Shown: positions 35,251-64,000 of the stretch, piece after piece
How positions within the stretch are numbered: the first letter of the stretch is position 1
Layout of the letters: every line of letters begins with the position of its first letter
Assembly (NCBI RefSeq): GCF_021869535.1
Contig: NW_026262701.1
Span: 16,554,001-16,618,000, forward strand
DNA from: Mytilus californianus
Taxonomy: Eukaryota
Length of the DNA: 64,000 nucleotides
Direction: 5' to 3'
The notes under the pieces: model-generated
Database searches by the model: none
The model's input: only the letters and a program-made list of their open reading frames with translations
What the model was told of the DNA's origin: nothing
Translations under genes and position numbers: made by a program

Positions 35251-35334
35251 TTTGATTTTGGACATTGGACCATAATAGGTAAATTAAAAAAATTCAAGTT
35301 CTTAGACCACATTCTTTCTGTGTCAGAAACCTAT

Positions 35335-35787
35335 GGTCCGAGTACACAGTTATTTTCCCCTATCTGTCTATTATAACATAATGATAAATAAAAAAAATCC
35401 CACCTGCGCTTTTCTAACAAGATTTGGTGTACATAAAGTTTGGCATTAACCACAAAACATATCAAAAAATTAGAAAACTTCATCGGCTCATTTTCTCTTG
35501 GCAACACAAAACACAAGGACACCAGTATGGGTTAAGCCAGAGAGCTTCCGAAAAGAGGAAATTACACCTATGTTTACCCAACCAAATCACTCATTTCTGC
35601 TCAAAATATCAAAAAGAAATTTTACAGAAATTATCTTAGATGACTTTACATTCACATAAAAGCAAAAAAAGGGGAAAAAATTCAAAGGAAAGGCAAAAAA
35701 AAAAATTAAGAAAAAATATACTGAAATTAAAGGGAACTATATTTGTGGACAACGAAAATTGAGGGAAGATAACTGTGTACCCGGACC
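35335..35787 (+). repeat. LTDR 1 (453 bp) with its own TIRs
   Basis: GGTCCGAGTACACAGTTATTTTCCC ... GGGAAGATAACTGTGTACCCGGACC (25-bp TIR, 2 mismatches). Confidence 0.95.
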
Positions 35788-36899
35788 TAATAGACCCTTT
35801 TTAGTTATCCAAATGAAATAAAATTTTATATTTATTAACTTTAATATATATCAAGACTGCATACCAAATTTCAGACCAATCGGACAATACTTGCACCAGC
35901 AATGACATTTCTTAAACACCTACCCTCATACCCAAATTTCAACAGTTTTCCTAGCATGAATTTGTCATTTTCCTAAAGACACCCACTTTATCAAAAGATT
36001 CATAACTTTTTTATTAGTGCAAGTTTTTTAAAAAATTAAAGTGATTCTGAAAGGTAAATCATTACCCAAATTTAATCTAAGATAAAAATTCCCAAAATCA
36101 GAATGGTTCATGGTGCAATTAAAGTTAATTTTTCATTTTTTGTTGTAAATCAGTGAAATCCCAACTTAGAATACTTTTAAAATTCAATTAAAATTTCAAA
36201 ACTCATCCCTAAATTGTGAGAATTGCATTAAAAAATTCCAAATTCATTCTAGAATAAACAAAATGAAACTTTATGGGGGTCTTGAATAACCTTTAGGCTA
36301 AATTACCTGTATATTCAACACCCCCTTTACATCATCTGCCCAAGGCTAAATATGAATGTAATAAAAAATTTTAAAACGATATAAAATCCTTATTTCTTTG
36401 AATATTGAGATGAAATAAAGTGTTTTGGAAAGGTTAAGAAGTGAGGAAATAATTGCAATTGAAAAATTTAATAAATAGTACAGTTTTTTTTTTCATTTGT
36501 TTTTTTTCTTAATTTAAAAAAAAATCAACAAAAAAATTCAACAAAAATTCACAAAATCACATTTTCTGAACAAAACAACTTTTAAAATTTGCCTAAATTA
36601 ATGTTTTTTGAAATCTAAACAAGGAAAACAAAATATTTCCCATTAAAAAGGCCAAACAAAGGCATTTTCTTTGAAGCAGACCAAACCCTTTGAAGTTAAA
36701 AATCACTTTCTTTAATCCCACAGCTAAAAATAGATCAAAACAATAAACAAAAATGATTGACAGCATCATTAAGCCAATTAAAAATCAGCATCAAAGTTAC
36801 ACAATGCAAAAAAGTATAAAAACTAACAATTTTGAGGTCTGTCATCAAAGTTTCATTCGACGCTTTACACCGCACCAGAATATTCTATTTATCATCAAA

Positions 36900-38933
36900 A
36901 TGTTTCCAAAGGGTTCCCCTCCATTCAACAAGGGCCTTATTGGACTGCAGAGAGGGAGAGTTGCACCTGGTTACAAGTTCAAGCATAACAGTACGCCATG
37001 GAATAAAGTCCCTGTCTTACAGCTGTCCACATCACCAGATCCAGAAGAAAACCATGCTCCTGCTGTTGAAATGAATGTTGAACAGAATGCTATCCTTGAT
37101 GAATCCCCATGCACTTCTTCTACTTCACCTGCAGACAATGACAGCAAAAGGACTCGTTCCCACCTACTGGTTCCATCAGCTGACCTGAAAACAGAAAAAG
37201 AGTGGTGTTCAATATCTGGTATGAGGTTCGTCGACCATGAAGAGATGATGAAGATGCTCAACACAGTTATAAATGTCCATACAAAGAAGTTTAGGCACTG
37301 TAAAAATCCTGAAATACTAGCACACAGACAGGAAAAATGGGGAGTCTGCTGGAAATATACACTTAGATGCAAGAACTGTACCTACATGAGTCCAGTTATG
37401 AAGCTGTATAAGGAGATTGTTACAAATAAACCTGGTACCAACCCTGGAGCACCCAATGTAGCAGTAGCAGCAGCAATACAAGACTGTCCAATGGGGAGTA
37501 CTAAACTCCAGGAGTTACTTGCCAGAATGGACTGTCCTCCTCCTTCAAGAACCAGCATGCACAGAATGACCCACAATGTTGGAAAAGAACTGGTACAACT
37601 TAATAATAGAGATATGGCAGAAAAACTGGAGATTGTAAAGGCAAAAAATCAAGAAAGGGGACTTGCAGAGAATGAAATCAATGTCACAGTCGACGGAAGG
37701 TACAACAGTCAGACAATAACTAGTCGAAAGAAACCTGGACTAAATGCTACCCAAGGTTTTGCACTTGCCATGGAGACAACAACAGAAAAGAAATATATTG
37801 TGGCATCATTTGCCCAGAATCAGATGTGCTGGAAAGGGGCCTGGTTGAGAGGAAAAGGATTTAAAGTGGAATGTCCCAATGGTCATGAAGACTGCACCGC
37901 AAACCTACACAGAACAGCTCCATTGTCAGAGTATGAGATGGGAAAGGAAATTGGTACACAGCTTGCTCTTCAAGACATCCTGGTGAAGAACGCCACAACT
38001 GATGGAGACGGACGGGCAGCTAAAGGAATAGACGATGCAACTAGAGCCCTACATCCTATGTGGAAAGTGGAACGACTAGCCGACTATGTACACCTTGGAC
38101 AGTCACAGTTTCGGGCATCACTGAGAGCTAAGTTCAGTGAATCCATGTTCTATGGGCGTACGAAAGAGATAAGGATGGAAATGAAGAAAGCGTTCAGCCA
38201 AGATGTGAAGTGCAGGAGCTCAATGATCATTGGACAGCTAATGGAGAAGCACAACAAAGTAACAGAAGATGTGTGTAAAGACTTACCCAAAGTCCTGGAG
38301 GCTACACTCAGATGTTATGATGGTGACTGCTCCATGTGTAAACAGTACTCTGTAGTTTGTACCGGCGATGAGGGTTATAACTGGTGGACTCGGTCCAAGT
38401 ATCTAGGATGCTACAATATCACTGTCCTGCAAATGGATGAAAAAGACAAATTATTACTACAAGAAATATTGAAGATGAAGCTAAGTGAGCAGGCATTAAA
38501 CAGCATGAAGTTATATGACACCACCAATAAGAATGAAGGTGTTCATAGAGCCCTCAGTGTCAACTTACCGAAGAATGTTATTCATTCAAGAGGCATGCAA
38601 GCAAGATTGGCATCCGGAATACACCGTAACAACAACAAGCCAGGAACATCAGCCAAAATGAAGTGTGAACACCTTGGGATTAATTTGTCGGAGAGCAGTA
38701 TACAGTTTTTGAGCAAAATGGACAGCGACTACACTTACAAACAAGAATATGAAAAAAAACCTGAAGTTAAACGTAGACGGCTAACTCGGAGTGGTGAAAA
38801 AATATTGGAACACAGAGAAGCTAAGCAAAGCCGAAAGAAGTGTGATGTTTACAGAAAAGGACAGTTAGACCCGGTTCCTGCATTGCTAAGCCATAGTACA
38901 AACTGTAAAAGGCCACTTCCACCTGCACCTTAG
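36900..38933 (+). CDS. DDE transposase, unit 1 (677 aa from MFPK; open upstream to 36753 in this unit only)
   Basis: Candidate triad VTVDGRY / TTDGDG / NKNEG; Cys/His clusters (CKNC; CWKG..CPNGHEDC; CYDGDCSMC); basic C-terminus. Confidence 0.88.
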   Translation: MFPKGSPPFNKGLIGLQRGRVAPGYKFKHNSTPWNKVPVLQLSTSPDPEENHAPAVEMNVEQNAILDESPCTSSTSPADNDSKRTRSHLLVPSADLKTEKEWCSISGMRFVDHEEMMKMLNTVINVHTKKFRHCKNPEILAHRQEKWGVCWKYTLRCKNCTYMSPVMKLYKEIVTNKPGTNPGAPNVAVAAAIQDCPMGSTKLQELLARMDCPPPSRTSMHRMTHNVGKELVQLNNRDMAEKLEIVKAKNQERGLAENEINVTVDGRYNSQTITSRKKPGLNATQGFALAMETTTEKKYIVASFAQNQMCWKGAWLRGKGFKVECPNGHEDCTANLHRTAPLSEYEMGKEIGTQLALQDILVKNATTDGDGRAAKGIDDATRALHPMWKVERLADYVHLGQSQFRASLRAKFSESMFYGRTKEIRMEMKKAFSQDVKCRSSMIIGQLMEKHNKVTEDVCKDLPKVLEATLRCYDGDCSMCKQYSVVCTGDEGYNWWTRSKYLGCYNITVLQMDEKDKLLLQEILKMKLSEQALNSMKLYDTTNKNEGVHRALSVNLPKNVIHSRGMQARLASGIHRNNNKPGTSAKMKCEHLGINLSESSIQFLSKMDSDYTYKQEYEKKPEVKRRRLTRSGEKILEHREAKQSRKKCDVYRKGQLDPVPALLSHSTNCKRPLPPAP

Positions 38934-38976
38934 ATGACAGCCAGCCAGCCAGCCAACCAACCAACCAACCAACCAA

Positions 38977-39021
<45 letters not shown>

Positions 39022-39547
39022 AGCACATAATATTAACCAAAGGTCCTTTTAAGGACCAACCATATCTTTCAAAAAGAAGTTTGAAATTGTTGTCTAAATC
39101 AATAAAATAATTAAATAAATAAATAGACCTTAAAAGATAAATAATATAAATAATACCAATATTATTGTTTGCCATCTTCAAGTGTACCATGCAAGGTGGC
39201 AAAGGGTCTGGGTGCCCAAGACAATGACCACACGAAATGCAGGTTTTTCTACTGTTGTTGAAGCCGTGTGGCTCTAACACAAGATGATCAGCATTTATAC
39301 ATTTTGTGTTGTGGCACAGGTGCGAGACATCAAAATTAGGTAGTTGAAAATTAAGATGCCTTATCATGAACGCAAGTCTGTGCACATGCATTTGTTTCCA
39401 CCCGCCAGCATTGGGAAGCTTGCAATTTATCACCCCATATTTTCTATTTGGTGTACAAGCCCCAGTCCAAATCAGACAATGTCCATTTTGGCCAGGGGCT
39501 GAATTTTCTGACAATTTTCTTGAATATTTTTGTATTATTCCCTCCAT
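38930..39547 (-). CDS. His-Me finger (His-Cys box, I-PpoI-like) endonuclease, unit 1
   Basis: CLIWTG...YG...HVHRLAF...SHLCHNTKCINADHLVLEPHGFNNSRKTC. The domain is ~125 aa; the rest is low-complexity read-through. Confidence 0.88.
38938..39020. repeat. (CCAG)n/(CCAA)n microsatellite between the convergent ORFs (also ~43430-43508 and ~47917-47995)
   Basis: Direct inspection; unit 1 has one extra tetramer. Confidence 0.9.
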
Positions 39548-39828
39548 TAAACTTTAAAGAACTTTTTTTACATTTGTATGTGTAGTAATTTGCCCCAAAA
39601 AGAGAAAAATTATGAACCCCTGTTAGCAAAATAGTTTCAAAAGTGTCAACAAGTAAAAACATTTTAACCAGAAGGCCAAAAATTGGTTTTTTTTTGCAAT
39701 TTAAAATTTTTTGTTCATATTTTCTATAAATAAACAATAAATTATCTTTAAATTTCAATTTTGAGGCAAATAGAGCAAATCAGGGGGCCACAAAGTCGAT
39801 TTTTAGATAAAGTGGGTTCTGCCTCTTA

Positions 39829-40281
39829 GGTCCGAGTACACAGTTATTTTCCCCTATCTGTCTATTATAACATAATGATAAATAAAAAAAATCCCACCTG
39901 CGCTTTTCTAACAAGATTTGGTGTACATAAAGTTTGGCATTAACCACAAAACATATCAAAAAATTAGAAAACTTCATCGGCTCATTTTCTCTTGGCAACA
40001 CAAAACACAAGGACACCAGTATGGGTTAAGCCAGAGAGCTTCCGAAAAGAGGAAATTACACCTATGTTTACCCAACCAAATCACTCATTTCTGCTCAAAA
40101 TATCAAAAAGAAATTTTACAGAAATTATCTTAGATGACTTTACATTCACATAAAAGCAAAAAAAGGGGAAAAAATTCAAAGGAAAGGCAAAAAAAAAAAT
40201 TAAGAAAAAATATACTGAAATTAAAGGGAACTATATTTGTGGACAACGAAAATTGAGGGAAGATAACTGTGTACCCGGACC
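39829..40281 (+). repeat. LTDR 2 (453 bp), shared between units 1 and 2
   Basis: Same termini as LTDR 1; flanked by CTTA| and |TAAT. Confidence 0.95.
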
Positions 40282-41391
40282 TAATAGACCCTTTTTAGTT
40301 ATCCAAATGAAATAAAATTTTATATTTATTAACTTTAATATATATCAAGACTGCATACCAAATTTCAGACCAATCGGACAATACTTGCACCAGCAATGAC
40401 ATTTCTTAAACACCTACCCTCATACCCAAATTTCAACAGTTTTCCTAGCATGAATTTGTCATTTTCCTAAAGACACCCACTTTATCAAAAGATTCATAAC
40501 TTTTTTATTAGTGCAAGTTTTTTAAAAAATTAAAGTGATTCTGAAAGGTAAATCATTACCCAAATTTAATCTAAGATAAAAATTCCCAAAATCAGAATGG
40601 TTCATGGTGCAATTAAAGTTAATTTTTCATTTTTTGTTGTAAATCAGTGAAATCCCAACTTAGAATACTTTTAAAATTCAATTAAAATTTCAAAACTCAT
40701 CCCTAAATTGTGAGAATTGCATTAAAAAATTCCAAATTCATTCTAGAATAAACAAAATGAAACTTTATGGGGGTCTTGAATAACCTTTAGGCTAAATTAC
40801 CTGTATATTCAACACCCCCTTTACATCATCTGCCCAAGGCTAAATATGAATGTAATAAAAAATTTTAAAACGATATAAAATCCTTATTTCTTTGAATATT
40901 GAGATGAAATAAAGTGTTTTGGAAAGGTTAAGAAGTGAGGAAATAATTGCAATTGAAAAATTTAATAAATAGTACAGTTTTTTTTTCATTTGTTTTTTTT
41001 CTTAATTTAAAAAAAAATCAACAAAAAAATTCAACAAAAATTCACAAAATCACATTTTCTGAACAAAACAACTTTTAAAATTTGCCTAAATTAATGTTTT
41101 TTGAAATCTAAACAAGGAAAACAAAATATTTCCCATTAAAAAGGCCAAACAAAGGCATTTTCTTTGAAGCAGACCAAACCCTTTGAAGTTAAAAATCACT
41201 TTCTTTAATCCCACAGCTAAAAATAGATCAAAACAATAAACAAAAATGATTGACAGCATCATTAAGCCAATTAAAAATCAGCATCAAAGTTACACAATGC
41301 AAAAAGTATAAAAACTAACAATTTTGAGGTCTGTCATCAAAGTTTCATTCGACGCTTTACACCGCACCAGAATATTCTATTTATCATCAAA

Positions 41392-43425
41392 ATGTTTCCA
41401 AAGGGTTCCCCTCCATTCAACAAGGGCCTTATTGGACTGCAGAGAGGGAGAGTTGCACCTGGTTACAAGTTCAAGCATAACAGTACGCCATGGAATAAAG
41501 TCCCTGTCTTACAGCTGTCCACATCACCAGATCCAGAAGAAAACCATGCTCCTGCTGTTGAAATGAATGTTGAACAGAATGCTATCCTTGATGAATCCCC
41601 ATGCACTTCTTCTACTTCACCTGCAGACAATGACAGCAAAAGGACTCGTTCCCACCTACTGGTTCCATCAGCTGACCTGAAAACAGAAAAAGAGTGGTGT
41701 TCAATATCTGGTATGAGGTTCGTCGACCATGAAGAGATGATGAAGATGCTCAACACAGTTATAAATGTCCATACAAAGAAGTTTAGGCACTGTAAAAATC
41801 CTGAAATACTAGCACACAGACAGGAAAAATGGGGAGTCTGCTGGAAATATACACTTAGATGCAAGAACTGTACCTACATGAGTCCAGTTATGAAGCTGTA
41901 TAAGGAGATTGTTACAAATAAACCTGGTACCAACCCTGGAGCACCCAATGTAGCAGTAGCAGCAGCAATACAAGACTGTCCAATGGGGAGTACTAAACTC
42001 CAGGAGTTACTTGCCAGAATGGACTGTCCTCCTCCTTCAAGAACCAGCATGCACAGAATGACCCACAATGTTGGAAAAGAACTGGTACAACTTAATAATA
42101 GAGATATGGCAGAAAAACTGGAGATTGTAAAGGCAAAAAATCAAGAAAGGGGACTTGCAGAGAATGAAATCAATGTCACAGTCGACGGAAGGTACAACAG
42201 TCAGACAATAACTAGTCGAAAGAAACCTGGACTAAATGCTACCCAAGGTTTTGCACTTGCCATGGAGACAACAACAGAAAAGAAATATATTGTGGCATCA
42301 TTTGCCCAGAATCAGATGTGCTGGAAAGGGGCCTGGTTGAGAGGAAAAGGATTTAAAGTGGAATGTCCCAATGGTCATGAAGACTGCACCGCAAACCTAC
42401 ACAGAACAGCTCCATTGTCAGAGTATGAGATGGGAAAGGAAATTGGTACACAGCTTGCTCTTCAAGACATCCTGGTGAAGAACGCCACAACTGATGGAGA
42501 CGGACGGGCAGCTAAAGGAATAGACGATGCAACTAGAGCCCTACATCCTATGTGGAAAGTGGAACGACTAGCCGACTATGTACACCTTGGACAGTCACAG
42601 TTTCGGGCATCACTGAGAGCTAAGTTCAGTGAATCCATGTTCTATGGGCGTACGAAAGAGATAAGGATGGAAATGAAGAAAGCGTTCAGCCAAGATGTGA
42701 AGTGCAGGAGCTCAATGATCATTGGACAGCTAATGGAGAAGCACAACAAAGTAACAGAAGATGTGTGTAAAGACTTACCCAAAGTCCTGGAGGCTACACT
42801 CAGATGTTATGATGGTGACTGCTCCATGTGTAAACAGTACTCTGTAGTTTGTACCGGCGATGAGGGTTATAACTGGTGGACTCGGTCCAAGTATCTAGGA
42901 TGCTACAATATCACTGTCCTGCAAATGGATGAAAAAGACAAATTATTACTACAAGAAATATTGAAGATGAAGCTAAGTGAGCAGGCATTAAACAGCATGA
43001 AGTTATATGACACCACCAATAAGAATGAAGGTGTTCATAGAGCCCTCAGTGTCAACTTACCGAAGAATGTTATTCATTCAAGAGGCATGCAAGCAAGATT
43101 GGCATCCGGAATACACCGTAACAACAACAAGCCAGGAACATCAGCCAAAATGAAGTGTGAACACCTTGGGATTAATTTGTCGGAGAGCAGTATACAGTTT
43201 TTGAGCAAAATGGACAGCGACTACACTTACAAACAAGAATATGAAAAAAAACCTGAAGTTAAACGTAGACGGCTAACTCGGAGTGGTGAAAAAATATTGG
43301 AACACAGAGAAGCTAAGCAAAGCCGAAAGAAGTGTGATGTTTACAGAAAAGGACAGTTAGACCCGGTTCCTGCATTGCTAAGCCATAGTACAAACTGTAA
43401 AAGGCCACTTCCACCTGCACCTTAG
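41392..43425 (+). CDS. DDE transposase, unit 2 (677 aa)
   Basis: Translation identical to unit 1 from MFPK. Confidence 0.88.
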   Translation: MFPKGSPPFNKGLIGLQRGRVAPGYKFKHNSTPWNKVPVLQLSTSPDPEENHAPAVEMNVEQNAILDESPCTSSTSPADNDSKRTRSHLLVPSADLKTEKEWCSISGMRFVDHEEMMKMLNTVINVHTKKFRHCKNPEILAHRQEKWGVCWKYTLRCKNCTYMSPVMKLYKEIVTNKPGTNPGAPNVAVAAAIQDCPMGSTKLQELLARMDCPPPSRTSMHRMTHNVGKELVQLNNRDMAEKLEIVKAKNQERGLAENEINVTVDGRYNSQTITSRKKPGLNATQGFALAMETTTEKKYIVASFAQNQMCWKGAWLRGKGFKVECPNGHEDCTANLHRTAPLSEYEMGKEIGTQLALQDILVKNATTDGDGRAAKGIDDATRALHPMWKVERLADYVHLGQSQFRASLRAKFSESMFYGRTKEIRMEMKKAFSQDVKCRSSMIIGQLMEKHNKVTEDVCKDLPKVLEATLRCYDGDCSMCKQYSVVCTGDEGYNWWTRSKYLGCYNITVLQMDEKDKLLLQEILKMKLSEQALNSMKLYDTTNKNEGVHRALSVNLPKNVIHSRGMQARLASGIHRNNNKPGTSAKMKCEHLGINLSESSIQFLSKMDSDYTYKQEYEKKPEVKRRRLTRSGEKILEHREAKQSRKKCDVYRKGQLDPVPALLSHSTNCKRPLPPAP

Positions 43426-43468
43426 ATGACAGCCAGCCAGCCAGCCAACCAACCAACCAACCAACCAA

Positions 43469-43509
<41 letters not shown>

Positions 43510-44035
43510 AGCACATAATATTAACCAAAGGTCCTTTTAAGGACCAACCATATCTTTCAAAAAGAAGTTTGAAATTGTTGTCTAAATCAATAAAATAATT
43601 AAATAAATAAATAGACCTTAAAAGATAAATAATATAAATAATACCAATATTATTGTTTGCCATCTTCAAGTGTACCATGCAAGGTGGCAAAGGGTCTGGG
43701 TGCCCAAGACAATGACCACACGAAATGCAGGTTTTTCTACTGTTGTTGAAGCCGTGTGGCTCTAACACAAGATGATCAGCATTTATACATTTTGTGTTGT
43801 GGCACAGGTGCGAGACATCAAAATTAGGTAGTTGAAAATTAAGATGCCTTATCATGAACGCAAGTCTGTGCACATGCATTTGTTTCCACCCGCCAGCATT
43901 GGGAAGCTTGCAATTTATCACCCCATATTTTCTATTTGGTGTACAAGCCCCAGTCCAAATCAGACAATGTCCATTTTGGCCAGGGGCTGAATTTTCTGAC
44001 AATTTTCTTGAATATTTTTGTATTATTCCCTCCAT
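43313..44035 (-). CDS. His-Me finger endonuclease, unit 2
   Basis: Same nuclease domain; the frame reads through the microsatellite and overlaps the transposase 3' end by 113 bp. Confidence 0.85.
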
Positions 44036-44315
44036 TAAACTTTAAAGAACTTTTTTTACATTTGTATGTGTAGTAATTTGCCCCAAAAAGAGAAAAATTA
44101 TGAACCCCTGTTAGCAAAATAGTTTCAAAAGTGTCAACAAGTAAAAACATTTTAACCAGAAGGCCAAAAATTGGTTTTTTTTGCAATTTAAAATTTTTTG
44201 TTCATATTTTCTATAAATAAACAATAAATTATCTTTAAATTTCAATTTTGAGGCAAATAGAGCAAATCAGGGGGCCACAAAGTCGATTTTTAGATAAAGT
44301 GGGTTCTGCCTCTTA

Positions 44316-44768
44316 GGTCCGAGTACACAGTTATTTTCCCCTATCTGTCTATTATAACATAATGATAAATAAAAAAAATCCCACCTGCGCTTTTCTAACA
44401 AGATTTGGTGTACATAAAGTTTGGCATTAACCACAAAACATATCAAAAAATTAGAAAACTTCATCGGCTCATTTTCTCTTGGCAACACAAAACACAAGGA
44501 CACCAGTATGGGTTAAGCCAGAGAGCTTCCGAAAAGAGGAAATTACACCTATGTTTACCCAACCAAATCACTCATTTCTGCTCAAAATATCAAAAAGAAA
44601 TTTTACAGAAATTATCTTAGATGACTTTACATTCACATAAAAGCAAAAAAAGGGGAAAAAATTCAAAGGAAAGGCAAAAAAAAAAATTAAGAAAAAATAT
44701 ACTGAAATTAAAGGGAACTATATTTGTGGACAACGAAAATTGAGGGAAGATAACTGTGTACCCGGACC
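44316..44768 (+). repeat. LTDR 3 (453 bp)
   Basis: Same termini and inner flanks as LTDR 2. Confidence 0.95.
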
Positions 44769-45878
44769 TAATAGACCCTTTTTAGTTATCCAAATGAAAT
44801 AAAATTTTATATTTATTAACTTTAATATATATCAAGACTGCATACCAAATTTCAGACCAATCGGACAATACTTGCACCAGCAATGACATTTCTTAAACAC
44901 CTACCCTCATACCCAAATTTCAACAGTTTTCCTAGCATGAATTTGTCATTTTCCTAAAGACACCCACTTTATCAAAAGATTCATAACTTTTTTATTAGTG
45001 CAAGTTTTTTAAAAAATTAAAGTGATTCTGAAAGGTAAATCATTACCCAAATTTAATCTAAGATAAAAATTCCCAAAATCAGAATGGTTCATGGTGCAAT
45101 TAAAGTTAATTTTTCATTTTTTGTTGTAAATCAGTGAAATCCCAACTTAGAATACTTTTAAAATTCAATTAAAATTTCAAAACTCATCCCTAAATTGTGA
45201 GAATTGCATTAAAAAATTCCAAATTCATTCTAGAATAAACAAAATGAAACTTTATGGGGGTCTTGAATAACCTTTAGGCTAAATTACCTGTATATTCAAC
45301 ACCCCCTTTACATCATCTGCCCAAGGCTAAATATGAATGTAATAAAAAATTTTAAAACGATATAAAATCCTTATTTCTTTGAATATTGAGATGAAATAAA
45401 GTGTTTTGGAAAGGTTAAGAAGTGAGGAAATAATTGCAATTGAAAAATTTAATAAATAGTACAGTTTTTTTTTCATTTGTTTTTTTTCTTAATTTAAAAA
45501 AAAATCAACAAAAAAATTCAACAAAAATTCACAAAATCACATTTTCTGAACAAAACAACTTTTAAAATTTGCCTAAATTAATGTTTTTTGAAATCTAAAC
45601 AAGGAAAACAAAATATTTCCCATTAAAAAGGCCAAACAAAGGCATTTTCTTTGAAGCAGACCAAACCCTTTGAAGTTAAAAATCACTTTCTTTAATCCCA
45701 CAGCTAAAAATAGATCAAAACAATAAACAAAAATGATTGACAGCATCATTAAGCCAATTAAAAATCAGCATCAAAGTTACACAATGCAAAAAGTATAAAA
45801 ACTAACAATTTTGAGGTCTGTCATCAAAGTTTCATTCGACGCTTTACACCGCACCAGAATATTCTATTTATCATCAAA

Positions 45879-47912
45879 ATGTTTCCAAAGGGTTCCCCTC
45901 CATTCAACAAGGGCCTTATTGGACTGCAGAGAGGGAGAGTTGCACCTGGTTACAAGTTCAAGCATAACAGTACGCCATGGAATAAAGTCCCTGTCTTACA
46001 GCTGTCCACATCACCAGATCCAGAAGAAAACCATGCTCCTGCTGTTGAAATGAATGTTGAACAGAATGCTATCCTTGATGAATCCCCATGCACTTCTTCT
46101 ACTTCACCTGCAGACAATGACAGCAAAAGGACTCGTTCCCACCTACTGGTTCCATCAGCTGACCTGAAAACAGAAAAAGAGTGGTGTTCAATATCTGGTA
46201 TGAGGTTCGTCGACCATGAAGAGATGATGAAGATGCTCAACACAGTTATAAATGTCCATACAAAGAAGTTTAGGCACTGTAAAAATCCTGAAATACTAGC
46301 ACACAGACAGGAAAAATGGGGAGTCTGCTGGAAATATACACTTAGATGCAAGAACTGTACCTACATGAGTCCAGTTATGAAGCTGTATAAGGAGATTGTT
46401 ACAAATAAACCTGGTACCAACCCTGGAGCACCCAATGTAGCAGTAGCAGCAGCAATACAAGACTGTCCAATGGGGAGTACTAAACTCCAGGAGTTACTTG
46501 CCAGAATGGACTGTCCTCCTCCTTCAAGAACCAGCATGCACAGAATGACCCACAATGTTGGAAAAGAACTGGTACAACTTAATAATAGAGATATGGCAGA
46601 AAAACTGGAGATTGTAAAGGCAAAAAATCAAGAAAGGGGACTTGCAGAGAATGAAATCAATGTCACAGTCGACGGAAGGTACAACAGTCAGACAATAACT
46701 AGTCGAAAGAAACCTGGACTAAATGCTACCCAAGGTTTTGCACTTGCCATGGAGACAACAACAGAAAAGAAATATATTGTGGCATCATTTGCCCAGAATC
46801 AGATGTGCTGGAAAGGGGCCTGGTTGAGAGGAAAAGGATTTAAAGTGGAATGTCCCAATGGTCATGAAGACTGCACCGCAAACCTACACAGAACAGCTCC
46901 ATTGTCAGAGTATGAGATGGGAAAGGAAATTGGTACACAGCTTGCTCTTCAAGACATCCTGGTGAAGAACGCCACAACTGATGGAGACGGACGGGCAGCT
47001 AAAGGAATAGACGATGCAACTAGAGCCCTACATCCTATGTGGAAAGTGGAACGACTAGCCGACTATGTACACCTTGGACAGTCACAGTTTCGGGCATCAC
47101 TGAGAGCTAAGTTCAGTGAATCCATGTTCTATGGGCGTACGAAAGAGATAAGGATGGAAATGAAGAAAGCGTTCAGCCAAGATGTGAAGTGCAGGAGCTC
47201 AATGATCATTGGACAGCTAATGGAGAAGCACAACAAAGTAACAGAAGATGTGTGTAAAGACTTACCCAAAGTCCTGGAGGCTACACTCAGATGTTATGAT
47301 GGTGACTGCTCCATGTGTAAACAGTACTCTGTAGTTTGTACCGGCGATGAGGGTTATAACTGGTGGACTCGGTCCAAGTATCTAGGATGCTACAATATCA
47401 CTGTCCTGCAAATGGATGAAAAAGACAAATTATTACTACAAGAAATATTGAAGATGAAGCTAAGTGAGCAGGCATTAAACAGCATGAAGTTATATGACAC
47501 CACCAATAAGAATGAAGGTGTTCATAGAGCCCTCAGTGTCAACTTACCGAAGAATGTTATTCATTCAAGAGGCATGCAAGCAAGATTGGCATCCGGAATA
47601 CACCGTAACAACAACAAGCCAGGAACATCAGCCAAAATGAAGTGTGAACACCTTGGGATTAATTTGTCGGAGAGCAGTATACAGTTTTTGAGCAAAATGG
47701 ACAGCGACTACACTTACAAACAAGAATATGAAAAAAAACCTGAAGTTAAACGTAGACGGCTAACTCGGAGTGGTGAAAAAATATTGGAACACAGAGAAGC
47801 TAAGCAAAGCCGAAAGAAGTGTGATGTTTACAGAAAAGGACAGTTAGACCCGGTTCCTGCATTGCTAAGCCATAGTACAAACTGTAAAAGGCCACTTCCA
47901 CCTGCACCTTAG
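45879..47912 (+). CDS. DDE transposase, unit 3 (677 aa)
   Basis: Translation identical to unit 2. Confidence 0.88.
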   Translation: MFPKGSPPFNKGLIGLQRGRVAPGYKFKHNSTPWNKVPVLQLSTSPDPEENHAPAVEMNVEQNAILDESPCTSSTSPADNDSKRTRSHLLVPSADLKTEKEWCSISGMRFVDHEEMMKMLNTVINVHTKKFRHCKNPEILAHRQEKWGVCWKYTLRCKNCTYMSPVMKLYKEIVTNKPGTNPGAPNVAVAAAIQDCPMGSTKLQELLARMDCPPPSRTSMHRMTHNVGKELVQLNNRDMAEKLEIVKAKNQERGLAENEINVTVDGRYNSQTITSRKKPGLNATQGFALAMETTTEKKYIVASFAQNQMCWKGAWLRGKGFKVECPNGHEDCTANLHRTAPLSEYEMGKEIGTQLALQDILVKNATTDGDGRAAKGIDDATRALHPMWKVERLADYVHLGQSQFRASLRAKFSESMFYGRTKEIRMEMKKAFSQDVKCRSSMIIGQLMEKHNKVTEDVCKDLPKVLEATLRCYDGDCSMCKQYSVVCTGDEGYNWWTRSKYLGCYNITVLQMDEKDKLLLQEILKMKLSEQALNSMKLYDTTNKNEGVHRALSVNLPKNVIHSRGMQARLASGIHRNNNKPGTSAKMKCEHLGINLSESSIQFLSKMDSDYTYKQEYEKKPEVKRRRLTRSGEKILEHREAKQSRKKCDVYRKGQLDPVPALLSHSTNCKRPLPPAP

Positions 47913-47955
47913 ATGACAGCCAGCCAGCCAGCCAACCAACCAACCAACCAACCAA

Positions 47956-47996
<41 letters not shown>

Positions 47997-48522
47997 AGCA
48001 CATAATATTAACCAAAGGTCCTTTTAAGGACCAACCATATCTTTCAAAAAGAAGTTTGAAATTGTTGTCTAAATCAATAAAATAATTAAATAAATAAATA
48101 GACCTTAAAAGATAAATAATATAAATAATACCAATATTATTGTTTGCCATCTTCAAGTGTACCATGCAAGGTGGCAAAGGGTCTGGGTGCCCAAGACAAT
48201 GACCACACGAAATGCAGGTTTTTCTACTGTTGTTGAAGCCGTGTGGCTCTAACACAAGATGATCAGCATTTATACATTTTGTGTTGTGGCACAGGTGCGA
48301 GACATCAAAATTAGGTAGTTGAAAATTAAGATGCCTTATCATGAACGCAAGTCTGTGCACATGCATTTGTTTCCACCCGCCAGCATTGGGAAGCTTGCAA
48401 TTTATCACCCCATATTTTCTATTTGGTGTACAAGCCCCAGTCCAAATCAGACAATGTCCATTTTGGCCAGGGGCTGAATTTTCTGACAATTTTCTTGAAT
48501 ATTTTTGTATTATTCCCTCCAT
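47800..48522 (-). CDS. His-Me finger endonuclease, unit 3
   Basis: Translation identical to unit 2. Confidence 0.85.
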
Positions 48523-48802
48523 TAAACTTTAAAGAACTTTTTTTACATTTGTATGTGTAGTAATTTGCCCCAAAAAGAGAAAAATTATGAACCCCTGTTA
48601 GCAAAATAGTTTCAAAAGTGTCAACAAGTAAAAACATTTTAACCAGAAGGCCAAAAATTGGTTTTTTTTGCAATTTAAAATTTTTTGTTCATATTTTCTA
48701 TAAATAAACAATAAATTATCTTTAAATTTCAATTTTGAGGCAAATAGAGCAAATCAGGGGGCCACAAAGTCGATTTTTAGATAAAGTGGGTTCTGCCTCT
48801 TA

Positions 48803-49255
48803 GGTCCGAGTACACAGTTATTTTCCCCTATCTGTCTATTATAACATAATGATAAATAAAAAAAATCCCACCTGCGCTTTTCTAACAAGATTTGGTGTAC
48901 ATAAAGTTTGGCATTAACCACAAAACATATCAAAAAATTAGAAAACTTCATCGGCTCATTTTCTCTTGGCAACACAAAACACAAGGACACCAGTATGGGT
49001 TAAGCCAGAGAGCTTCCGAAAAGAGGAAATTACACCTATGTTTACCCAACCAAATCACTCATTTCTGCTCAAAATATCAAAAAGAAATTTTACAGAAATT
49101 ATCTTAGATGACTTTACATTCACATAAAAGCAAAAAAAGGGGAAAAAATTCAAAGGAAAGGCAAAAAAAAAAATTAAGAAAAAATATACTGAAATTAAAG
49201 GGAACTATATTTGTGGACAACGAAAATTGAGGGAAGATAACTGTGTACCCGGACC
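48803..49255 (+). repeat. LTDR 4 (453 bp), right end of the array
   Basis: Ends ...CCCGGACC, followed by the TSD CTAT. Confidence 0.95.
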
Positions 49256-52200
49256 CTATGCTGTGTCAAATATTTAATAACAATCCAAATTCAGAGCTGT
49301 ATCAAGCTTGAATGTTGTGTCCATACTTGCCCCAACTGTTCAGGGTTCGACCTCTGCGGTCGTATCAAGCTGCGCCCCAGCGAAGCATTTTATTCTATGT
49401 TGTTTCGCTCTTATTAAAATTCTGATCTTTATTAACTAGCATGCTCTTATATATAAGCTCAAATGAGGATAACGAAATCAGAGATCTATATTTTAATTAG
49501 ATTGATGTTGTTTACAAGTGTTTGTAAAATACATCGATGCTGTACAAAACGTTCTTTTTGTAGATAATCTTTAACTTCATGTCAATTGTAGGCCAATTTA
49601 TGTTCGATAAGTCATGTACATTACACTTGATATAAGTGTGTACGATGGAGTGATGAGCCTGCTGTTTCTAATTCTCATTTTGTTTTCATAACTTGTAACA
49701 GAAACCCTCCCCCTTTTTCACCGTTTGCAGTTTGTTTTTTTTATTTCTGTAAAGGAAATATATACTCAGACCTGCTAATTCAATCAATTCTGCGTTAATA
49801 TTCATCAGTTTTGGAACTAAGTACTATTTGATGTGCTTCCACGTTCATCAAAAGAGAATTGGATATTTACCCAGAAAATCATGACGAACACCTTCTATCA
49901 AAAGACGGAAAAAATAACAATTTTAGGGGGTAACTTATAAATGTTAATATCTAAAAAACATCTCTAAAGATCACTTAAATCGAACTTTATGTAAAAATTC
50001 CGATTTTGGAACTTTTAAAAGGTCAAGGTCACTGTTATTTAACAGCTCAATGAAAATTGTAAATGTGCACCTTTAAGTACAAATGTCAATCTCGAACCAT
50101 ATTTGGCAATAAAATTATCAAATTATTCCTAAATATAGAAACTATAGTTATAATCCTTTGAATTATTTGAATTTATTTTGTTATAAACACAAATATGTAG
50201 GGGTGGCCAGCTGTCTAAACGTGACTCTACGTTTTCCTTGAAATTTTAGATTTGACCTTTGACCCAAATTTAAGAAAATCGTGACCACTGTAGACAACGA
50301 CGACATCAATTTTTCGACGAGGCTTGTTCACCTCTTTCCAATGATATAAAATATAGCCGTGTGTTATTCCGTTAACCCAAATCGATTAAATTTGTTGACT
50401 GGGCACCCTACTAGTTACAACTCATGTATTTGCAGTTTGAACAGACGAGAATTCTTGAAAATCAATGAATTCATTTAATTTCTCATTTGTTGCGGACCTT
50501 ACATTTGTACATGTATATTGATTCTGTTAAATTTATTCATAACTTAACTATGATAAAAAATCAACATACAGATATTGTATGGAGACTTACTATTCTTGAA
50601 GACTGTATGATTTCCTCTAACTGTCAACATGGTCAATGCTCTTGTGTTAGTTGGGTCAGTTTCATATACTAGAAGAAAGGACAAAGACAAGCTGCGAAAA
50701 TAAATAATTGTTTTGACCTTCTCTTTGGGGTTATCTTAAACAGCTATTACAAGTATCATAAAGATGTGTTGGGCTACTCAAATTACGATCACAGGAAAAA
50801 TAACAACATAATTACGATAATTTTCGGCAACTGCCAAATGTAAACGACTATCAAAGTTTATTTTCCAGCTTGAGAGAGGTCCTCAATATGACATACTCAG
50901 AAGGAATCGTGATATCTTTGCGAATTAAAACAAAATATTGATCAAAGATGCTAAAACAAACTAAACCTAACAACAAACAAGTCAGAAATGATTATTTAGA
51001 TTACATATAAATCTTAAAAATAAAAATGGATCTTCACAAGGAATAAATGGTAATCAATCATATCATCTTGCATATCTATCTATGCTACTTATAACCATAG
51101 CAAATGACATAAACCTAAATCCAGGCCCAGACACAACAGTATTTCTATGCGGAACCTGTGACGAACCTGTTACATGGGAAGACAAAGGTATCATGTGTGA
51201 TACCTGTAACCAGTGGTACCATACCACCTGCCAGTCAGTCAGCTCTCGAACATACAACATCTTAGTAGAGGACAGTGCAATAGCTTGGGACTGCCTTATC
51301 TGTGACTGTCCTAATTACAGTTCAGTGTGCTTTGACATAGTATTATCCACCTCAAATTCATTTAGTATTCTATCTGATACATCTCTCCAGAGTCCACTCC
51401 CATCTGACTGTATCAAACCTATCCACGCATCAACACCAGACAGAAAGAAGCAGGATAAAAGACCAAAAAGCGTACCAATCAAGATGCTTACAGTAAATTT
51501 TCAGTCCATCAAATCAAAGCAAGGATTAGTTAAGAACTTGGTTGAAAGCACTAAACCAGATATTGTCCTAGGAACAGAAACCTGGATAGATTCTTCTGTA
51601 AAAGATAACCAGATTTTTCCACCAAATTACAACATCTACAGAAATGACCGCAACATGAAAGGAGGCGGGGTGCTAATAGCAATAAATCATGACCATCTAA
51701 GCACACCTGTACCCGAGTTACAAACAAATTGCGAGATTGTTTGGGCTAAAATCAGCTTAGCTGGTAGTAAAGACCTGTATCTTGCATCCTACTATAACCC
51801 CAAAACATCAAATGAAGAAAGCATTGAAGAACTTGGGCGAAGTCTTGAAAGAGTAAATGCTACAAAAAATGCCTTCATAGTAGTTGGTGGCGACTTCAAT
51901 CTCCCAGGCTGGAACTGGATAACAAGAACCCTGAAACCAGAATCAACATGTCAGAAAAACCACTACAAATTTGGCGACATTCTTGACGACAATGGACTTG
52001 TTCAACTAGTGGAGGAACCAACAAGAGGCCCTAACACGCTGGACCTAGTGATTACAAACAATCCAACACGCTTCACACGCACAAAAGTGATACCTGGGGT
52101 TTCAGACCACGACATCGTCTTCAGCGAAATAGACACCAAGCCCTTATCTAGGAAACAAAAACCTCGGAACATCCCCTTATACAGAAAGGCAAACTGGGAA

Positions 52201-62480: not shown

Positions 62481-62629
62481 CAAGATTTCTTGATTTTTTT
62501 TTTCCTTTTTTTTTTCTTTTAAAATTTTCCATTTTAAGTATGTTATTTCTGATTTATATTTTAAAGCAAATAATAATGATATGGTAGGAGATACACACCA
62601 AACAGGATGTGTAAATTATTATATAATAA

Positions 62630-62850: not shown

Positions 62851-62889
62851 AAGAAGATACTTCATATAAATTGCTTATTTCTTGACCAA

Positions 62890-64000
62890 TTTCAATGGGG
62901 TTTTATTCTTGAATTCTTGGGGTTCTTTAATATGCTGAATCTAACCGTGTATTTAGTTTTTGGATTTTGGGCCCCGTTTTTAAATTGGTCCACATTGAGG
63001 TCCAAAGGGTCCAAAATTAAACTTTGTTTGATTTCATCAAAAATTGAATTATTGGGGTTCTTTGATATACCGAATCTAACCGTGTATTTAGATTCTTAAT
63101 TTTTGGTTCCGTTTTCAAATTGGTCTACATTAAGGTCCAAAGGGTCCAAAATTAAACTAAGTTTGATTTTAACAAAAATTGAATTCTTAGGGTTCTTTGA
63201 TATGCTGAATCTAAACATGTATTTAGATTTTTGATTATGGGCCCAGTTTTCAAGTTGGTCCAAATCGGGGTCCAAAATTAAACTTTGTTTGATTTCAACA
63301 AAAATTGAATATATGGGGTTCTTTGATATGCTGAATCTAACCATGTATTTAGATTTTTGATTTTTGGGCCCTGTTATCAACTTTGTCCACATTGAGGTCA
63401 ATAGGGTCCAAAATTAAACTTTGTTTGATTTCATCAAAAATTGAATTCTTGGGGTTCTTTGATATGCTGAATCTAACCATGTATTTAGATTTTGGATATT
63501 GGACCAAAATAGGTGAATGTCCAATTTAAAATTTTTAAGTTCTTAGACCACATTCATTCTGTGTCAGAAACCTATGCTGTGTCAAATATTTAATCACAAT
63601 CCAAATGCAAAGCTGTATCAAGCTTGAATGTTGTGTCCATACTTGCCCCAACTGTTCAGGGTTCGACCTCTGCGGTCGTATCAAGCTGCGCCCTGCGGAG
63701 CATTTTATTATAAATTGGTCCACATTGAGGTCCAAAGGGTCCAAAATTAAACTTTGTTCGATTCCATCAAAAATTGAATTATTGGGGTTCTTTGATATGC
63801 CAAATCTAACCGTGTATTTAGATTCTTAATTTTTGGTTCCGTTTTCAAATTGGTCTTCATTTAAAGGTCCAAAGGGTCCAAAATTAAACTAAGTTTGATT
63901 TTAACAAAAATTGAATTCTTAGGGTTCTTTGATATGCTGAATCTAAACATGTATTTAGATTTTTGATTATGGGCCCAGTTTTCAAGTTGGTCCAAATCGG
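62890..64000 (+). repeat. Same ~126/136-bp HINE satellite family, with a HINE 3' end at ~63500-63710
   Basis: Monomers match 33370-35250; 63541-63710 matches 35300-35334 joined to 49260-49391. Confidence 0.85.

What the first reader, a model, noticed from the sequence alone, without database searches (positions are those of the whole stretch)
35335..49255. Tandem trimer of a composite-like DNA transposon (KolobokP-like) encoding a DDE transposase and a homing-type nuclease
Seen: (453-bp LTDR + ~4.03-kb internal region) x3 + LTDR, each LTDR with GGTCC TIRs, a single CTAT TSD around the whole 13.9 kb, and intact transposase and nuclease frames in all three units. Known: this LTR-like architecture in a DNA transposon with a His-Me nuclease matches KolobokP, a Kolobok lineage that I recall is rich in bivalves, so the family is probably not new. 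Inference: shared LTDRs and one TSD mean the trimer arose at one insertion site, by integration of a multimeric or circular intermediate or by unequal exchange between LTDRs. Near-identity of the units suggests very recent activity.
Basis: partly seen in the sequence, partly recalled or inferred. Interest (0 to 1): 0.88.

Follow-up and report, generated by a model that had tools for sequence, protein, structure and literature searches.

The report
Known mussel KolobokP transposon trimer
The 13.9-kb repeat is a real three-unit tandem copy of an already published mussel DNA transposon (KolobokP), so it is ordinary as an element, but its transposase gene ends in a conserved histone-type RNA stem-loop that I could not find reported before.

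Summary
Window 35335-49255 is (LTDR-INT)3-LTDR. The four 453-bp LTDRs are identical. Units 2 and 3 are identical, and unit 1 differs only by four indels in low-complexity runs. A paralogous empty site at 63572-63575 proves the CTAT target-site duplication.

Each unit carries an intact 677-aa DDE transposase and a convergent I-PpoI-like His-Cys-box nuclease. This architecture, including TSD-flanked multimers, was published as KolobokP (Kojima & Bao 2022, PMC9587614). The nearest named family is KolobokP-7_MyEd of Mytilus edulis, with about 94-95% protein identity. A genomic M. edulis copy is about 93% identical in DNA. The Pfam label "Mutator-like" (PF20700) is only a name: the 4-bp TSD, the missing MULE domain and the zinc-finger signature all argue for Kolobok and against MuDR. 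The finding is therefore already known.

One addition: about 105 nt downstream of each transposase stop, on the sense strand, lies a histone 3' stem-loop (Rfam RF00032, above the gathering score). It is followed by a conserved purine-rich element. The same signal sits at the same place in related families whose transposases are only 55-60% identical. These families form one supported group on the transposase tree. The signal is absent from other KolobokP lineages. It suggests histone-like, S-phase-coupled expression of the transposase. I found no report of this.

The parts
35331..35334 (.). Left copy of the 4-bp target-site duplication CTAT
   Evidence: the empty paralog at 63572-63575 has one CTAT.
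35335..35787 (+). LTDR 1 (453 bp). TIRs lie at 35335-35353 and 35769-35787, and the termini are GG...CC.
35788..39828 (+). INT 1 (4041 bp)
36900..38933 (+). Transposase CDS, unit 1 (677 aa). The ORF is open from 36753 because of one extra A at 36808.
   Evidence: Pfam PF20700 at 1e-67. The signature is D265, CCHC, D368/370, DxxH, a Cys4 finger and E546.
38938..39021 (+). (CAGC)n/(CCAA)n microsatellite in the transposase 3' UTR. It is one 4-bp unit longer than in units 2 and 3.
39037..39082 (+). Histone-type 3' stem-loop plus downstream purine-rich element, unit 1
   Evidence: RF00032 at 36.4 bits (gathering score 34)
38930..39547 (-). His-Cys-box (I-PpoI-like) nuclease ORF, unit 1. The conserved core is about 39158-39547 and the tail is non-conserved.
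39829..40281 (+). LTDR 2, shared by units 1 and 2
40282..44315 (+). INT 2 (4034 bp)
41392..43425 (+). Transposase CDS, unit 2 (677 aa)
43525..43570 (+). Histone-type 3' stem-loop, unit 2
43313..44035 (-). Nuclease ORF, unit 2 (240 codons). The core is identical to unit 1.
44316..44768 (+). LTDR 3, shared by units 2 and 3
44769..48802 (+). INT 3 (4034 bp, identical to INT 2)
45879..47912 (+). Transposase CDS, unit 3 (677 aa)
48012..48057 (+). Histone-type 3' stem-loop, unit 3
47800..48522 (-). Nuclease ORF, unit 3
48803..49255 (+). LTDR 4 (terminal)
49256..49259 (.). Right copy of the TSD CTAT
63470..63715 (+). Paralogous empty target site in a second copy of the host satellite-tail repeat, with a single CTAT at 63572-63575

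Best explanation
This is a (LTDR-INT)3-LTDR multimer of a KolobokP DNA transposon. It belongs to the KolobokP-7_MyEd / KolobokP-2_MyCo family group and lies in a Mytilus genome.

Shown: one insertion event placed the element at a CTAT site in the unique tail of a satellite-bearing host repeat. Every unit is potentially autonomous. Each has an intact intronless 677-aa DDE transposase with the Kolobok signature and a convergent I-PpoI-like His-Cys-box nuclease that retains all catalytic and zinc ligands.

Inferred: the transposase acts on the 19-25-nt TIRs that end each LTDR. Any left/right TIR pair in the array (solo LTDR, monomer, dimer or trimer) is therefore a possible mobile unit, and integration gives a 4-bp TSD.

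Inferred, about 0.55: the unit number grew in place by unequal exchange or break repair between identical LTDRs on sister chromatids, possibly stimulated by the element's own nuclease. The last step was dimer (a,b) to trimer (a,b,b), which fits units 2 and 3 being identical while unit 1 differs.

Additional inference: the transposase pre-mRNA is cut at a histone-type stem-loop/HDE signal. This would make it a non-polyadenylated, SLBP-bound message expressed mainly in S phase.
For: Anatomy and identity of units.

TSD with empty site.

Transposase: Pfam PF20700 at 1e-67. There were 98 relatives, the best being M. edulis at 94% and M. coruscus at 82%. The invariant positions are D265, C310/C325/H329/C332, D368/D370, D395xxH398, C472/C477/C480/C487 and E546.

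Nuclease: Pfam zf-His_Me_endon at 4.9e-11. The sequence hit to I-PpoI conserves S97, H98, C100, C105, H110, E114, N119 and C125. The AlphaFold model has pLDDT 89.7, and its best Foldseek hits are I-PpoI chains with probability 1.0.

Published description: the lineage, its multimers and the proposed mechanisms are in PMC9587614. The match to KolobokP-7_MyEd appears in the supplement and in Table S1, which lists it as 4855 bp, LTDR 454/451, TSD 3/4.

Related copies: monomeric relatives occur in M. edulis (about 93% DNA identity) and in M. coruscus (4-bp TSD ATAA).

Histone stem-loop: RF00032 scores at or above the gathering score of 34 in the window (three times), L001, L005, L011, L012, L013 and L014, and 33.9 bits in L002. 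Every hit is 30-110 nt after the transposase stop on the sense strand. The 3' UTR alignment shows an island of conservation at this signal. The stem-loop-bearing elements form one group on the tree with 99/99 support. There is no hit elsewhere in about 325 kb scanned.
Against: The number of units rests on one assembly. Units 2 and 3 and all four LTDRs are identical, so a collapsed or expanded array cannot be excluded without reads.

The four unit-1 differences are all homopolymer or microsatellite indels. They could be polishing errors, so the (a,b,b) history is weak.

The sequence cannot distinguish three origins: unequal exchange, integration of LTDR-INT circles, or transposition of a pre-formed multimer.

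The nuclease target is unknown, and I found no obvious semi-palindrome in the LTDR.

Superfamily placement (Kolobok rather than MuDR) rests on the published phylogeny and on signature features. I built no tree with reference Kolobok and MuDR proteins.

The function of the stem-loop is inferred from sequence conservation only. AATAAA motifs also follow it, so polyadenylated transcripts may exist too.
Confidence: 0.9

Rival explanations
1. The trimer is an assembly artefact. The real locus would hold one or two units, or some other number, and the assembler mis-counted a near-identical tandem repeat.
For: Units 2 and 3 are 100% identical over 4487 bp and all four LTDRs are identical. The only differences are indels in homopolymers and a microsatellite, which is typical of long-read consensus noise. 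A related ENA contig, of which L010 shows a part, is 13,371 bp, labelled '_c', and holds almost exactly three 4449-bp units. This shows that assemblers can close such arrays arbitrarily.
Against: Unit 1 is distinguishable from units 2 and 3 at four sites, so at least two units were resolved. The outer junctions are clean, with a proven TSD. TSD-flanked multimers of this lineage are documented in several independent assemblies (PMC9587614), and other multimers turned up here (L004 and L010).
Confidence: 0.12
2. The multimer did not grow by unequal exchange. Instead it arose by integration of circular LTDR-INT units into a resident LTDR, as with IS26 translocatable units, or it was inserted as a pre-formed multimer using its outermost TIRs.
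For: The result would be the same: shared LTDRs and one TSD. Kojima & Bao propose the circle model and report excision footprints that suggest circular intermediates. Every TIR in the array is intact, so the outermost pair could have moved a multimer.
Against: There is no abutted-TIR junction, footprint or INT-INT junction in this locus. Nothing in the sequence requires a circle. Homologous exchange between 453-bp identical repeats needs only host functions.
Confidence: 0.3
3. The element is a MuDR/MULE-type transposon, as the Pfam name 'Mutator-like transposase' suggests, and not a Kolobok.
For: PF20700 'Mutator' is the only Pfam hit (1e-67), and UniRef names the relatives 'Mutator-like transposase domain-containing protein'. 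MuDR, P, hAT, Kolobok and Dada share the C/DxxH motif (PMC9587614).
Against: The TSD is 4 bp rather than 8-10 bp. The TIRs are short and the termini are GG...CC. None of 23 family members hits MULE, Transposase_mut or SWIM models at E<=1. A Cys4 zinc finger lies between DxxH and E, and a CCHC finger follows the first D. The paper gives these as Kolobok features absent from MuDR, P and hAT. The protein is nearly identical to the Repbase entry KolobokP-7_MyEd.
Confidence: 0.03
4. The histone stem-loop match has no histone-like function. It would be a fortuitous or structural hairpin, for example a transcription or replication pause site between two convergent genes.
For: The scores are only just above the gathering threshold (33.9-40.4 bits against 34). 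The stem is a DNA palindrome lying between convergent genes. AATAAA motifs follow it. There are no expression data.
Against: The hits share the same strand, the same distance from the stop codon, the SLBP-critical features (GG/CC base pairs, U at loop positions 1 and 3, an A-rich 5' flank in all but L011, an ACC 3' flank) and a purine-rich CAAAAAGA about 13 nt downstream. All of this is kept in lineages with 55-60% protein identity, while the rest of the UTR is unalignable. No other hit occurred in about 325 kb.
Confidence: 0.3

Closest known systems
KolobokP-7_MyEd (Mytilus edulis; Repbase, Kojima & Bao 2022) and its M. coruscus counterpart KolobokP-2_MyCo
   Same: [quoted passage not shown] By eye, the protein is nearly identical to KolobokP-7_MyEd_1p in the paper's alignment. 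It is 94% identical to an M. edulis protein. A genomic M. edulis copy is about 93% identical in DNA and an M. coruscus copy 80-83%.
   Different: About 7% DNA divergence from the M. edulis copy, so this is a sister-species copy or a subfamily. The monomer is 4940 bp against the listed 4855 bp, partly because of an 84-bp microsatellite in the 3' UTR. This copy is a trimer with zero substitutions among units.
KolobokP multimers (LTDR-INT)n-LTDR as described in PMC9587614
   Same: Consecutive units share LTDRs and one TSD flanks the whole array. The same proposed origins apply: unequal crossover, circle integration, or nuclease-induced unequal repair.
   Different: Nothing structural. This locus adds an internal empty-site control and an (a,b,b) unit pattern.
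Bacterial composite and IS26-type pseudo-compound transposons
   Same: TIR-bearing modules in direct orientation bracket a passenger segment. Solo modules and arrays arise and can move independently.
   Different: Here the transposase is encoded in the internal segment and not in the flanking module. The host is a eukaryote, and a homing-type nuclease is present in addition.
Tandem LTR-retrotransposon arrays (e.g. TRIMs)
   Same: An LTR-INT-LTR-INT-LTR layout with shared repeats and a single TSD.
   Different: No reverse transcriptase or integrase. The repeats carry 19-25-nt TIRs and end GG...CC rather than TG...CA. The element encodes a DDE transposase.
I-PpoI and other His-Cys-box homing endonucleases of nuclear group I introns
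   Same: The catalytic H98 and N119 equivalents and both zinc sites are conserved. I-PpoI is the best structural match.
   Different: Not intron-encoded. About 18-20% identity. The target site is unknown. The ORF tail beyond about residue 130 is not conserved.
3' end of replication-dependent histone mRNAs (Rfam RF00032; SLBP/U7 processing)
   Same: A 6-bp stem with GG/CC at the base, a UUUA/UUUC loop, an A-rich 5' flank, an ACC 3' flank and a purine-rich element downstream. The signal lies a short distance after the stop codon of an intronless CDS.
   Different: It sits on a transposase gene rather than a histone gene. The stem is GGUCCU/AGGACC instead of the consensus GGCUCU/AGAGCC. Processing has not been shown.

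Membership tests
KolobokP (Kolobok superfamily) | Long terminal direct repeats of about 450 bp (or about 660 bp) at both ends | tested here: met
   Four identical 453-bp LTDRs
KolobokP (Kolobok superfamily) | Each LTDR has its own short TIRs, with termini 5'-RR...YY-3' | tested here: met
   GG...CC termini. The TIR is 19 nt with 1 mismatch, or 25 nt with 2.
KolobokP (Kolobok superfamily) | TSD of 3-5 bp flanking monomers and multimers | tested here: met
   CTAT on both sides, with a single CTAT in the empty paralog
KolobokP (Kolobok superfamily) | [quoted passage not shown] | tested here: met
KolobokP (Kolobok superfamily) | Transposase signature: a CCHC finger after the first D, a C/DxxH motif, and a zinc finger between C/DxxH and the last E | tested here: met
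   Invariant or near-invariant D265, C310/C325/H329/C332, D368/D370, D395xxH398, C472/C477/C480/C487 and E546 in 23 relatives. The catalytic roles are assigned by position and have not been shown.
KolobokP (Kolobok superfamily) | Transposase groups with named KolobokP/Kolobok proteins and not with MuDR, P or hAT | tested here: inconclusive
   By eye, the protein is nearly identical to KolobokP-7_MyEd_1p in the paper's supplementary alignment. I built no tree with reference Kolobok and MuDR proteins, because the published sequences have no reference id and could not be handed to the tools.
MuDR / MULE | TSD of 8-10 bp and long TIRs | tested here: not met
   4-bp TSD and 19-25-nt TIRs
MuDR / MULE | MULE or Transposase_mut catalytic domain (Pfam PF10551 / PF00872) | tested here: not met
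   None of 23 family members hits these models at E<=1. Only PF20700 is hit.
LTR retrotransposon | Reverse transcriptase, integrase and gag in the internal region; LTRs ending TG...CA | tested here: not met
   The only ORFs of 80 aa or more with Pfam hits are the transposase and the nuclease. The repeats end GG...CC.
His-Cys-box homing endonuclease (I-PpoI group) | His-Me finger catalytic residues and two zinc sites | tested here: met
   Pfam zf-His_Me_endon at 43.4 bits against a cut-off of 27. Equivalents of S97, H98, C100, C105, H110, E114, N119 and C125 are conserved.
His-Cys-box homing endonuclease (I-PpoI group) | I-PpoI-like fold | tested here: met
   The model has pLDDT 89.7. The top four Foldseek PDB hits are I-PpoI chains (probability 0.99-1.0, TM 0.43-0.53), followed by I-HmuI.
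His-Cys-box homing endonuclease (I-PpoI group) | Site-specific double-strand cleavage of a defined homing site | not testable with these tools
   No obvious semi-palindrome in the LTDR. This needs a cleavage assay.
Replication-dependent histone-type 3' end | Stem-loop that satisfies the Rfam RF00032 model at the curated threshold | tested here: met
   36.4 bits in each of the three units. Relatives score 34.1-40.4 bits, and one scores 33.9.
Replication-dependent histone-type 3' end | Downstream purine-rich element (HDE) complementary to the host U7 snRNA | tested here: inconclusive
   A conserved CAAAAAGA lies about 13 nt after the stem in the aligned stem-loop-bearing loci window, L001, L005 and L011, with AAAAAAGA in L002, L012 and L014. 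Only L015 lacks it, where the contig ends about 30 nt after the stem.
Replication-dependent histone-type 3' end | Cleavage after the stem, no poly(A) tail, SLBP binding, S-phase expression | not testable with these tools
   Needs RNA data.

The most novel reading that the evidence does not exclude
One subclade of KolobokP transposons in mytilid mussels acquired the 3'-end processing signal of replication-dependent histone mRNAs (stem-loop plus HDE) on its transposase gene. It appears to have gained it once and kept it through long divergence. If so, transposase expression is tied to S phase through SLBP and U7. That would be a transposon using the histone mRNA pathway to time its activity to DNA replication, which is when sister-chromatid repair or unequal exchange can raise copy number.
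Probability: 0.5. Interest if true: 0.7.

Novelty: already known. Interest (0 to 1): 0.35.

Why it matters
As an element, this locus is a textbook-clean example of a published lineage and not a discovery. It has intact genes, zero substitutions among units and an internal empty-site control. Such a locus could serve as a candidate active copy for testing how KolobokP moves and multimerises.

The histone-type stem-loop on the transposase gene is the part worth following up. If functional, it is a simple, testable case of a DNA transposon coupling its expression to DNA replication by borrowing a host RNA-processing signal. It also bears on the replication-linked multimerisation model proposed for this lineage.

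Tried and rejected
1. MuDR classification, suggested by the Pfam name. Rejected on TSD length, absence of MULE-type domains and the zinc-finger signature.

2. LTR-retrotransposon array. Rejected because there is no RT or IN and the termini are wrong.

3. Search for a solved structure related to the transposase. Nothing meaningful came back.

4. Literature search for PF20700. No paper found.

5. Search for a semi-palindromic candidate nuclease site in the LTDR. Only trivial AT-rich palindromes, all in the INT.

6. Other LTDR or INT copies in the window (solo LTDRs). None beyond the array.

7. Large perfect inverted repeat around the array as a sign of misassembly. Rejected: the arms are two complete copies of another transposon, each with its own TSD.

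8. Literature on histone stem-loops in transposons. Nothing relevant in the searchable library. A search for mussel HDE sequences was uninformative.

9. Computed alignment of the window's LTDR and INT with the published consensus. Left out, because the published sequences exist only as PDF text with no reference id. The comparison was made by eye and by short-string look-ups.

10. Host species. Not determined beyond Mytilus, closest to M. edulis.

Full report
**1. Observation**

Direct-repeat analysis and a three-way alignment of the units confirm the layout.
- The four 453-bp LTDRs lie at 35335-35787, 39829-40281, 44316-44768 and 48803-49255. All are 100% identical.
- They are separated by INTs of 4041, 4034 and 4034 bp.
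- Units 2 and 3 are identical over 4487 bp.
- Unit 1 differs only by four indels and has no substitution: T at 36484, A at 36808, CCAG at 38977-38980, T at 39687. All four lie in homopolymers or a microsatellite.
- The window contains no N.

Each LTDR starts GGTCCGAGTACACAGTTAT and ends with the reverse complement of GGTCCGGGTACACAGTTAT. That is a 19-nt TIR with one mismatch. It extends to 25 nt with two mismatches, and the termini are GG...CC.

**2. Target-site duplication and single insertion**

CTAT lies directly outside both ends, at 35331-35334 and 49256-49259. The array sits in the unique tail that follows a 126/262/389-bp satellite (33389-35259). A second copy of that satellite-plus-tail repeat lies at 62909-63715 in the same window. 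It is continuous across the insertion point and has a single CTAT at 63572-63575. The 4-bp duplication is therefore real, and the whole 13.9 kb derives from one insertion site.

**3. Genes**

*Transposase.* Each unit has an uninterrupted 677-codon ORF on the + strand: 36900-38933, 41392-43425 and 45879-47912. The protein is identical in all three. In unit 1 the extra A at 36808 opens the frame 49 codons further upstream. The protein matches Pfam PF20700 end to end (1e-67). The database search returned 98 relatives, all carrying PF20700. The best are Mytilus edulis at 94% and M. coruscus at 82%, followed by other mussels, scallop, limpets and abalone. An alignment of 23 relatives down to 23% identity shows these invariant or near-invariant positions:
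- D265;
- a CCHC set (C310, C325, H329, C332);
- D368/D370;
- D395xxH398;
- a Cys4 set (C472, C477, C480, C487);
- E546.

*Nuclease.* On the - strand, converging on the transposase, each unit has an ORF starting at 39547, 44035 or 48522. It matches Pfam zf-His_Me_endon (43.4 bits) and I-PpoI in the PDB. The equivalents of S97, H98, C100, C105, H110, E114, N119 and C125 are conserved. Conservation among 19 relatives stops near residue 130. The tails are unrelated read-through, and the CCAG indel changes only that tail, giving 205 versus 240 codons. An AlphaFold model of the core has pLDDT 89.7. Its best Foldseek PDB matches are I-PpoI chains (probability 0.99-1.0, TM 0.43-0.53), followed by I-HmuI.

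**4. What it is**

The architecture is exactly that published as KolobokP by Kojima & Bao (Mob DNA 2022, PMC9587614). The defining features are:
- LTDRs of about 450 or 660 bp with their own TIRs and RR...YY ends;
- TSDs of 3-5 bp;
- a transposase plus an I-PpoI-like nuclease on opposite strands;
- abundance in bivalves;
- frequent solo LTDRs and TSD-flanked multimers (LTDR-INT)n-LTDR.

In the paper's supplementary alignment the protein named KolobokP-7_MyEd_1p is nearly identical to the window's transposase. Table S1 lists that family as 4855 bp, LTDR 454/451, TSD 3/4, TIR 17. Its LTDR consensus is visibly homologous to the window's LTDR. The INT termini also resemble KolobokP-2_MyCo.

I compared two genomic copies directly.
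- A 3'-truncated M. edulis copy (L001) is about 93% identical in DNA.
- An M. coruscus monomer (L005) is 80-83% identical and has a 4-bp TSD, ATAA.

The window therefore comes from a Mytilus genome. The species was not determined.

**5. Kolobok or Mutator?**

Pfam's name for PF20700 is "Mutator-like transposase", and UniRef copies it. Four results argue that this is only a name.
- None of 23 family members hits MULE, Transposase_mut or any other transposase model at E<=1.
- The TSD is 4 bp and not 8-10 bp.
- The TIRs are short.
- The two zinc fingers are the ones the paper gives as Kolobok features absent from MuDR, P and hAT.

I did not build a tree with reference proteins. Superfamily placement therefore rests on the published phylogeny plus these features.

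**6. How it probably works**

*Shown:* there was one insertion, all genes are intact, and all eight TIRs are intact.

*Inferred:* the transposase uses any left/right TIR pair. The array therefore offers ten possible mobile segments: four solo LTDRs, three monomers, two dimers and one trimer.

The origin of the multimer cannot be read from the sequence. Three routes give the same product: unequal sister-chromatid exchange between LTDRs, integration of LTDR-INT circles, and insertion of a pre-formed multimer. I favour in-place LTDR-LTDR exchange or break repair, at about 0.55, possibly triggered by the element's own nuclease as the paper proposes. The (a,b,b) pattern fits a dimer-to-trimer step by exchange at an LTDR. 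However, the four differences could be consensus errors. The LTDR contains no obvious semi-palindrome that might be a nuclease site.

Assembly error in the unit count remains possible, at about 0.12.

**7.

An Rfam scan of the window gave only three hits, one per unit. All are RF00032, the histone 3' UTR stem-loop, on the + strand at 39037-39082, 43525-43570 and 48012-48057. Each scores 36.4 bits against a gathering score of 34, with E = 6e-7.

The signal lies about 105 nt after the transposase stop, beyond an 84-bp (CAGC)n/(CCAA)n microsatellite. Its features are:
- a 5' flank CCAAA;
- a stem GGUCCU/AGGACC, which differs from the consensus GGCUCU/AGAGCC on both sides of two pairs while keeping them paired;
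- a loop UUUA;
- a 3' flank AACCA;
- a purine-rich CAAAAAGAAG about 13 nt further on, where a histone downstream element would be.

The same signal lies 30-80 nt after the transposase stop, on the sense strand, in related loci.

| Locus | Source | Transposase identity to window | RF00032 score (bits) |
|---|---|---|---|
| L001 | M. edulis | 94% | 36.3 |
| L005 | M. coruscus | 82% | 40.4 |
| L002 | second M. edulis family | 60% | 33.9 |
| L011 | ENA contig | 55% | 36.7 |
| L012, L013, L014 | ENA, Logan and metagenome contigs | 59% | 34.1 |
| L015 | metagenome contig | 60% | script only |

- L015 matched my stem-loop pattern script only. Its contig ends about 30 nt after the stem and it did not reach the Rfam threshold.
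- The 5' flank is ACUCA in L011 and UAAAA in L002, L012, L013, L014 and L015, against CCAAA in the window.
- In the 3' UTR alignment only the stem-loop and the CAAAAAGA element are conserved between families.
- Short-string look-ups in the published consensus sequences found the motif in three places. One is KolobokP-7_MyEd-like. One has a C-terminus that matches KolobokP-101_PeVi of Perna viridis. One lies among the Modiolus philippinarum entries.
- On a maximum-likelihood transposase tree, the six stem-loop-bearing rows form one group with 99/99 support, and a stem-loop-free element (L010) is their sister.
- No RF00032 hit occurs anywhere else in about 325 kb scanned. That total includes 47 KolobokP loci of other lineages.

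The transposase CDS is intronless, like histone genes.

The simplest reading is a single gain in a mytilid KolobokP subclade, followed by purifying selection. This implies SLBP/U7-type 3' processing and S-phase-biased expression of the transposase. That is inference from sequence only. AATAAA motifs also follow the signal.

The KolobokP paper mentions neither histone nor stem-loop. Three literature searches found no report of such a signal in a transposon. The library is incomplete, so this absence is not proof.

**8. Verdict**

The element and its multimeric arrangement are already known, so the finding as submitted is of low novelty. The conserved histone-type 3' end is a modest but real new lead.

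Noticed in passing
window 39037-39082, 43525-43570, 48012-48057 (+); also L001 8055-8100, L005 5892-5937, L002 6022-6066, L011 6103-6148, L012 2805-2850, L013 2124-2169, L014 3252-3297: A histone 3' UTR stem-loop (Rfam RF00032) with a conserved downstream purine-rich element lies just after the transposase stop. It is conserved in one KolobokP subclade of mytilid mussels and absent from other lineages.
   Followed up: yes
window 26427-31338 and 54184-59095: A perfect 4912-bp inverted pair brackets the region. Each arm is a complete copy of another DNA transposon, with a 15-bp TIR (CAGAGTTCGCGAAAA) and its own 6-bp TSD (CCCTTA; GTATCA). The ORFs carry zf-C17orf113 and DUF4371 (hAT-like) domains. 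The two copies are 100% identical, so this element was also active recently.
   Followed up: partly
window 33389-35259 and 62909-64000: Satellite arrays of about 126-137-bp monomers with 262- and 389-bp higher-order periods, each followed by a unique tail of about 210 bp. The KolobokP array is inserted in one tail, and the other tail serves as the empty site. The unit looks like the tandem-repeat-bearing mobile elements known from bivalves, but I did not classify it.
   Followed up: partly
window 18214-23169 and 51082-54447: ORFs of non-LTR retrotransposon type (reverse transcriptase; an AP-endonuclease plus PHD finger in the second). The window holds no evident host gene.
   Followed up: partly
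window 38938-39021 (and 43430-43509, 47917-47996): An 80-84-bp (CAGC)n/(CCAA)n microsatellite lies between the transposase stop and the stem-loop. The M. edulis copy (L001) has only about 12 bp there. It lengthens the 3' UTR from about 40 to about 105 nt and also forms the junk tail of the nuclease ORF.
   Followed up: yes
L010 (ENA ERZ25067879, contig ctg68276_4x_c, 13,371 bp) and L004 (ENA ERZ25073814): Other KolobokP multimers. The contig behind L010 is labelled '_c' and equals almost exactly three 4449-bp units, so it is either a closed tandem array or a real circle. L004 shows a second transposase 5317 bp after the first.
   Followed up: no
proteins P0069 and P0070: KolobokP-type transposases are annotated in metagenome-assembled genomes of Candidatus Thiodiazotropha, the symbionts of lucinid clams. 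The most likely cause is host clam DNA binned with the bacterium.
   Followed up: no
window 60683-62477 and 62629-62857: Further tandem repeats, with 108-123-bp units and a 35-bp unit, next to the second satellite array.
   Followed up: no
window 36808 versus 41300 and 45787: An A6 versus A5 run decides whether the transposase frame is open from an upstream ATG (MIDSII..., as in the published KolobokP-7_MyEd protein) or starts at MFPKG, as in other families. The conserved start is MFPKG.
   Followed up: partly
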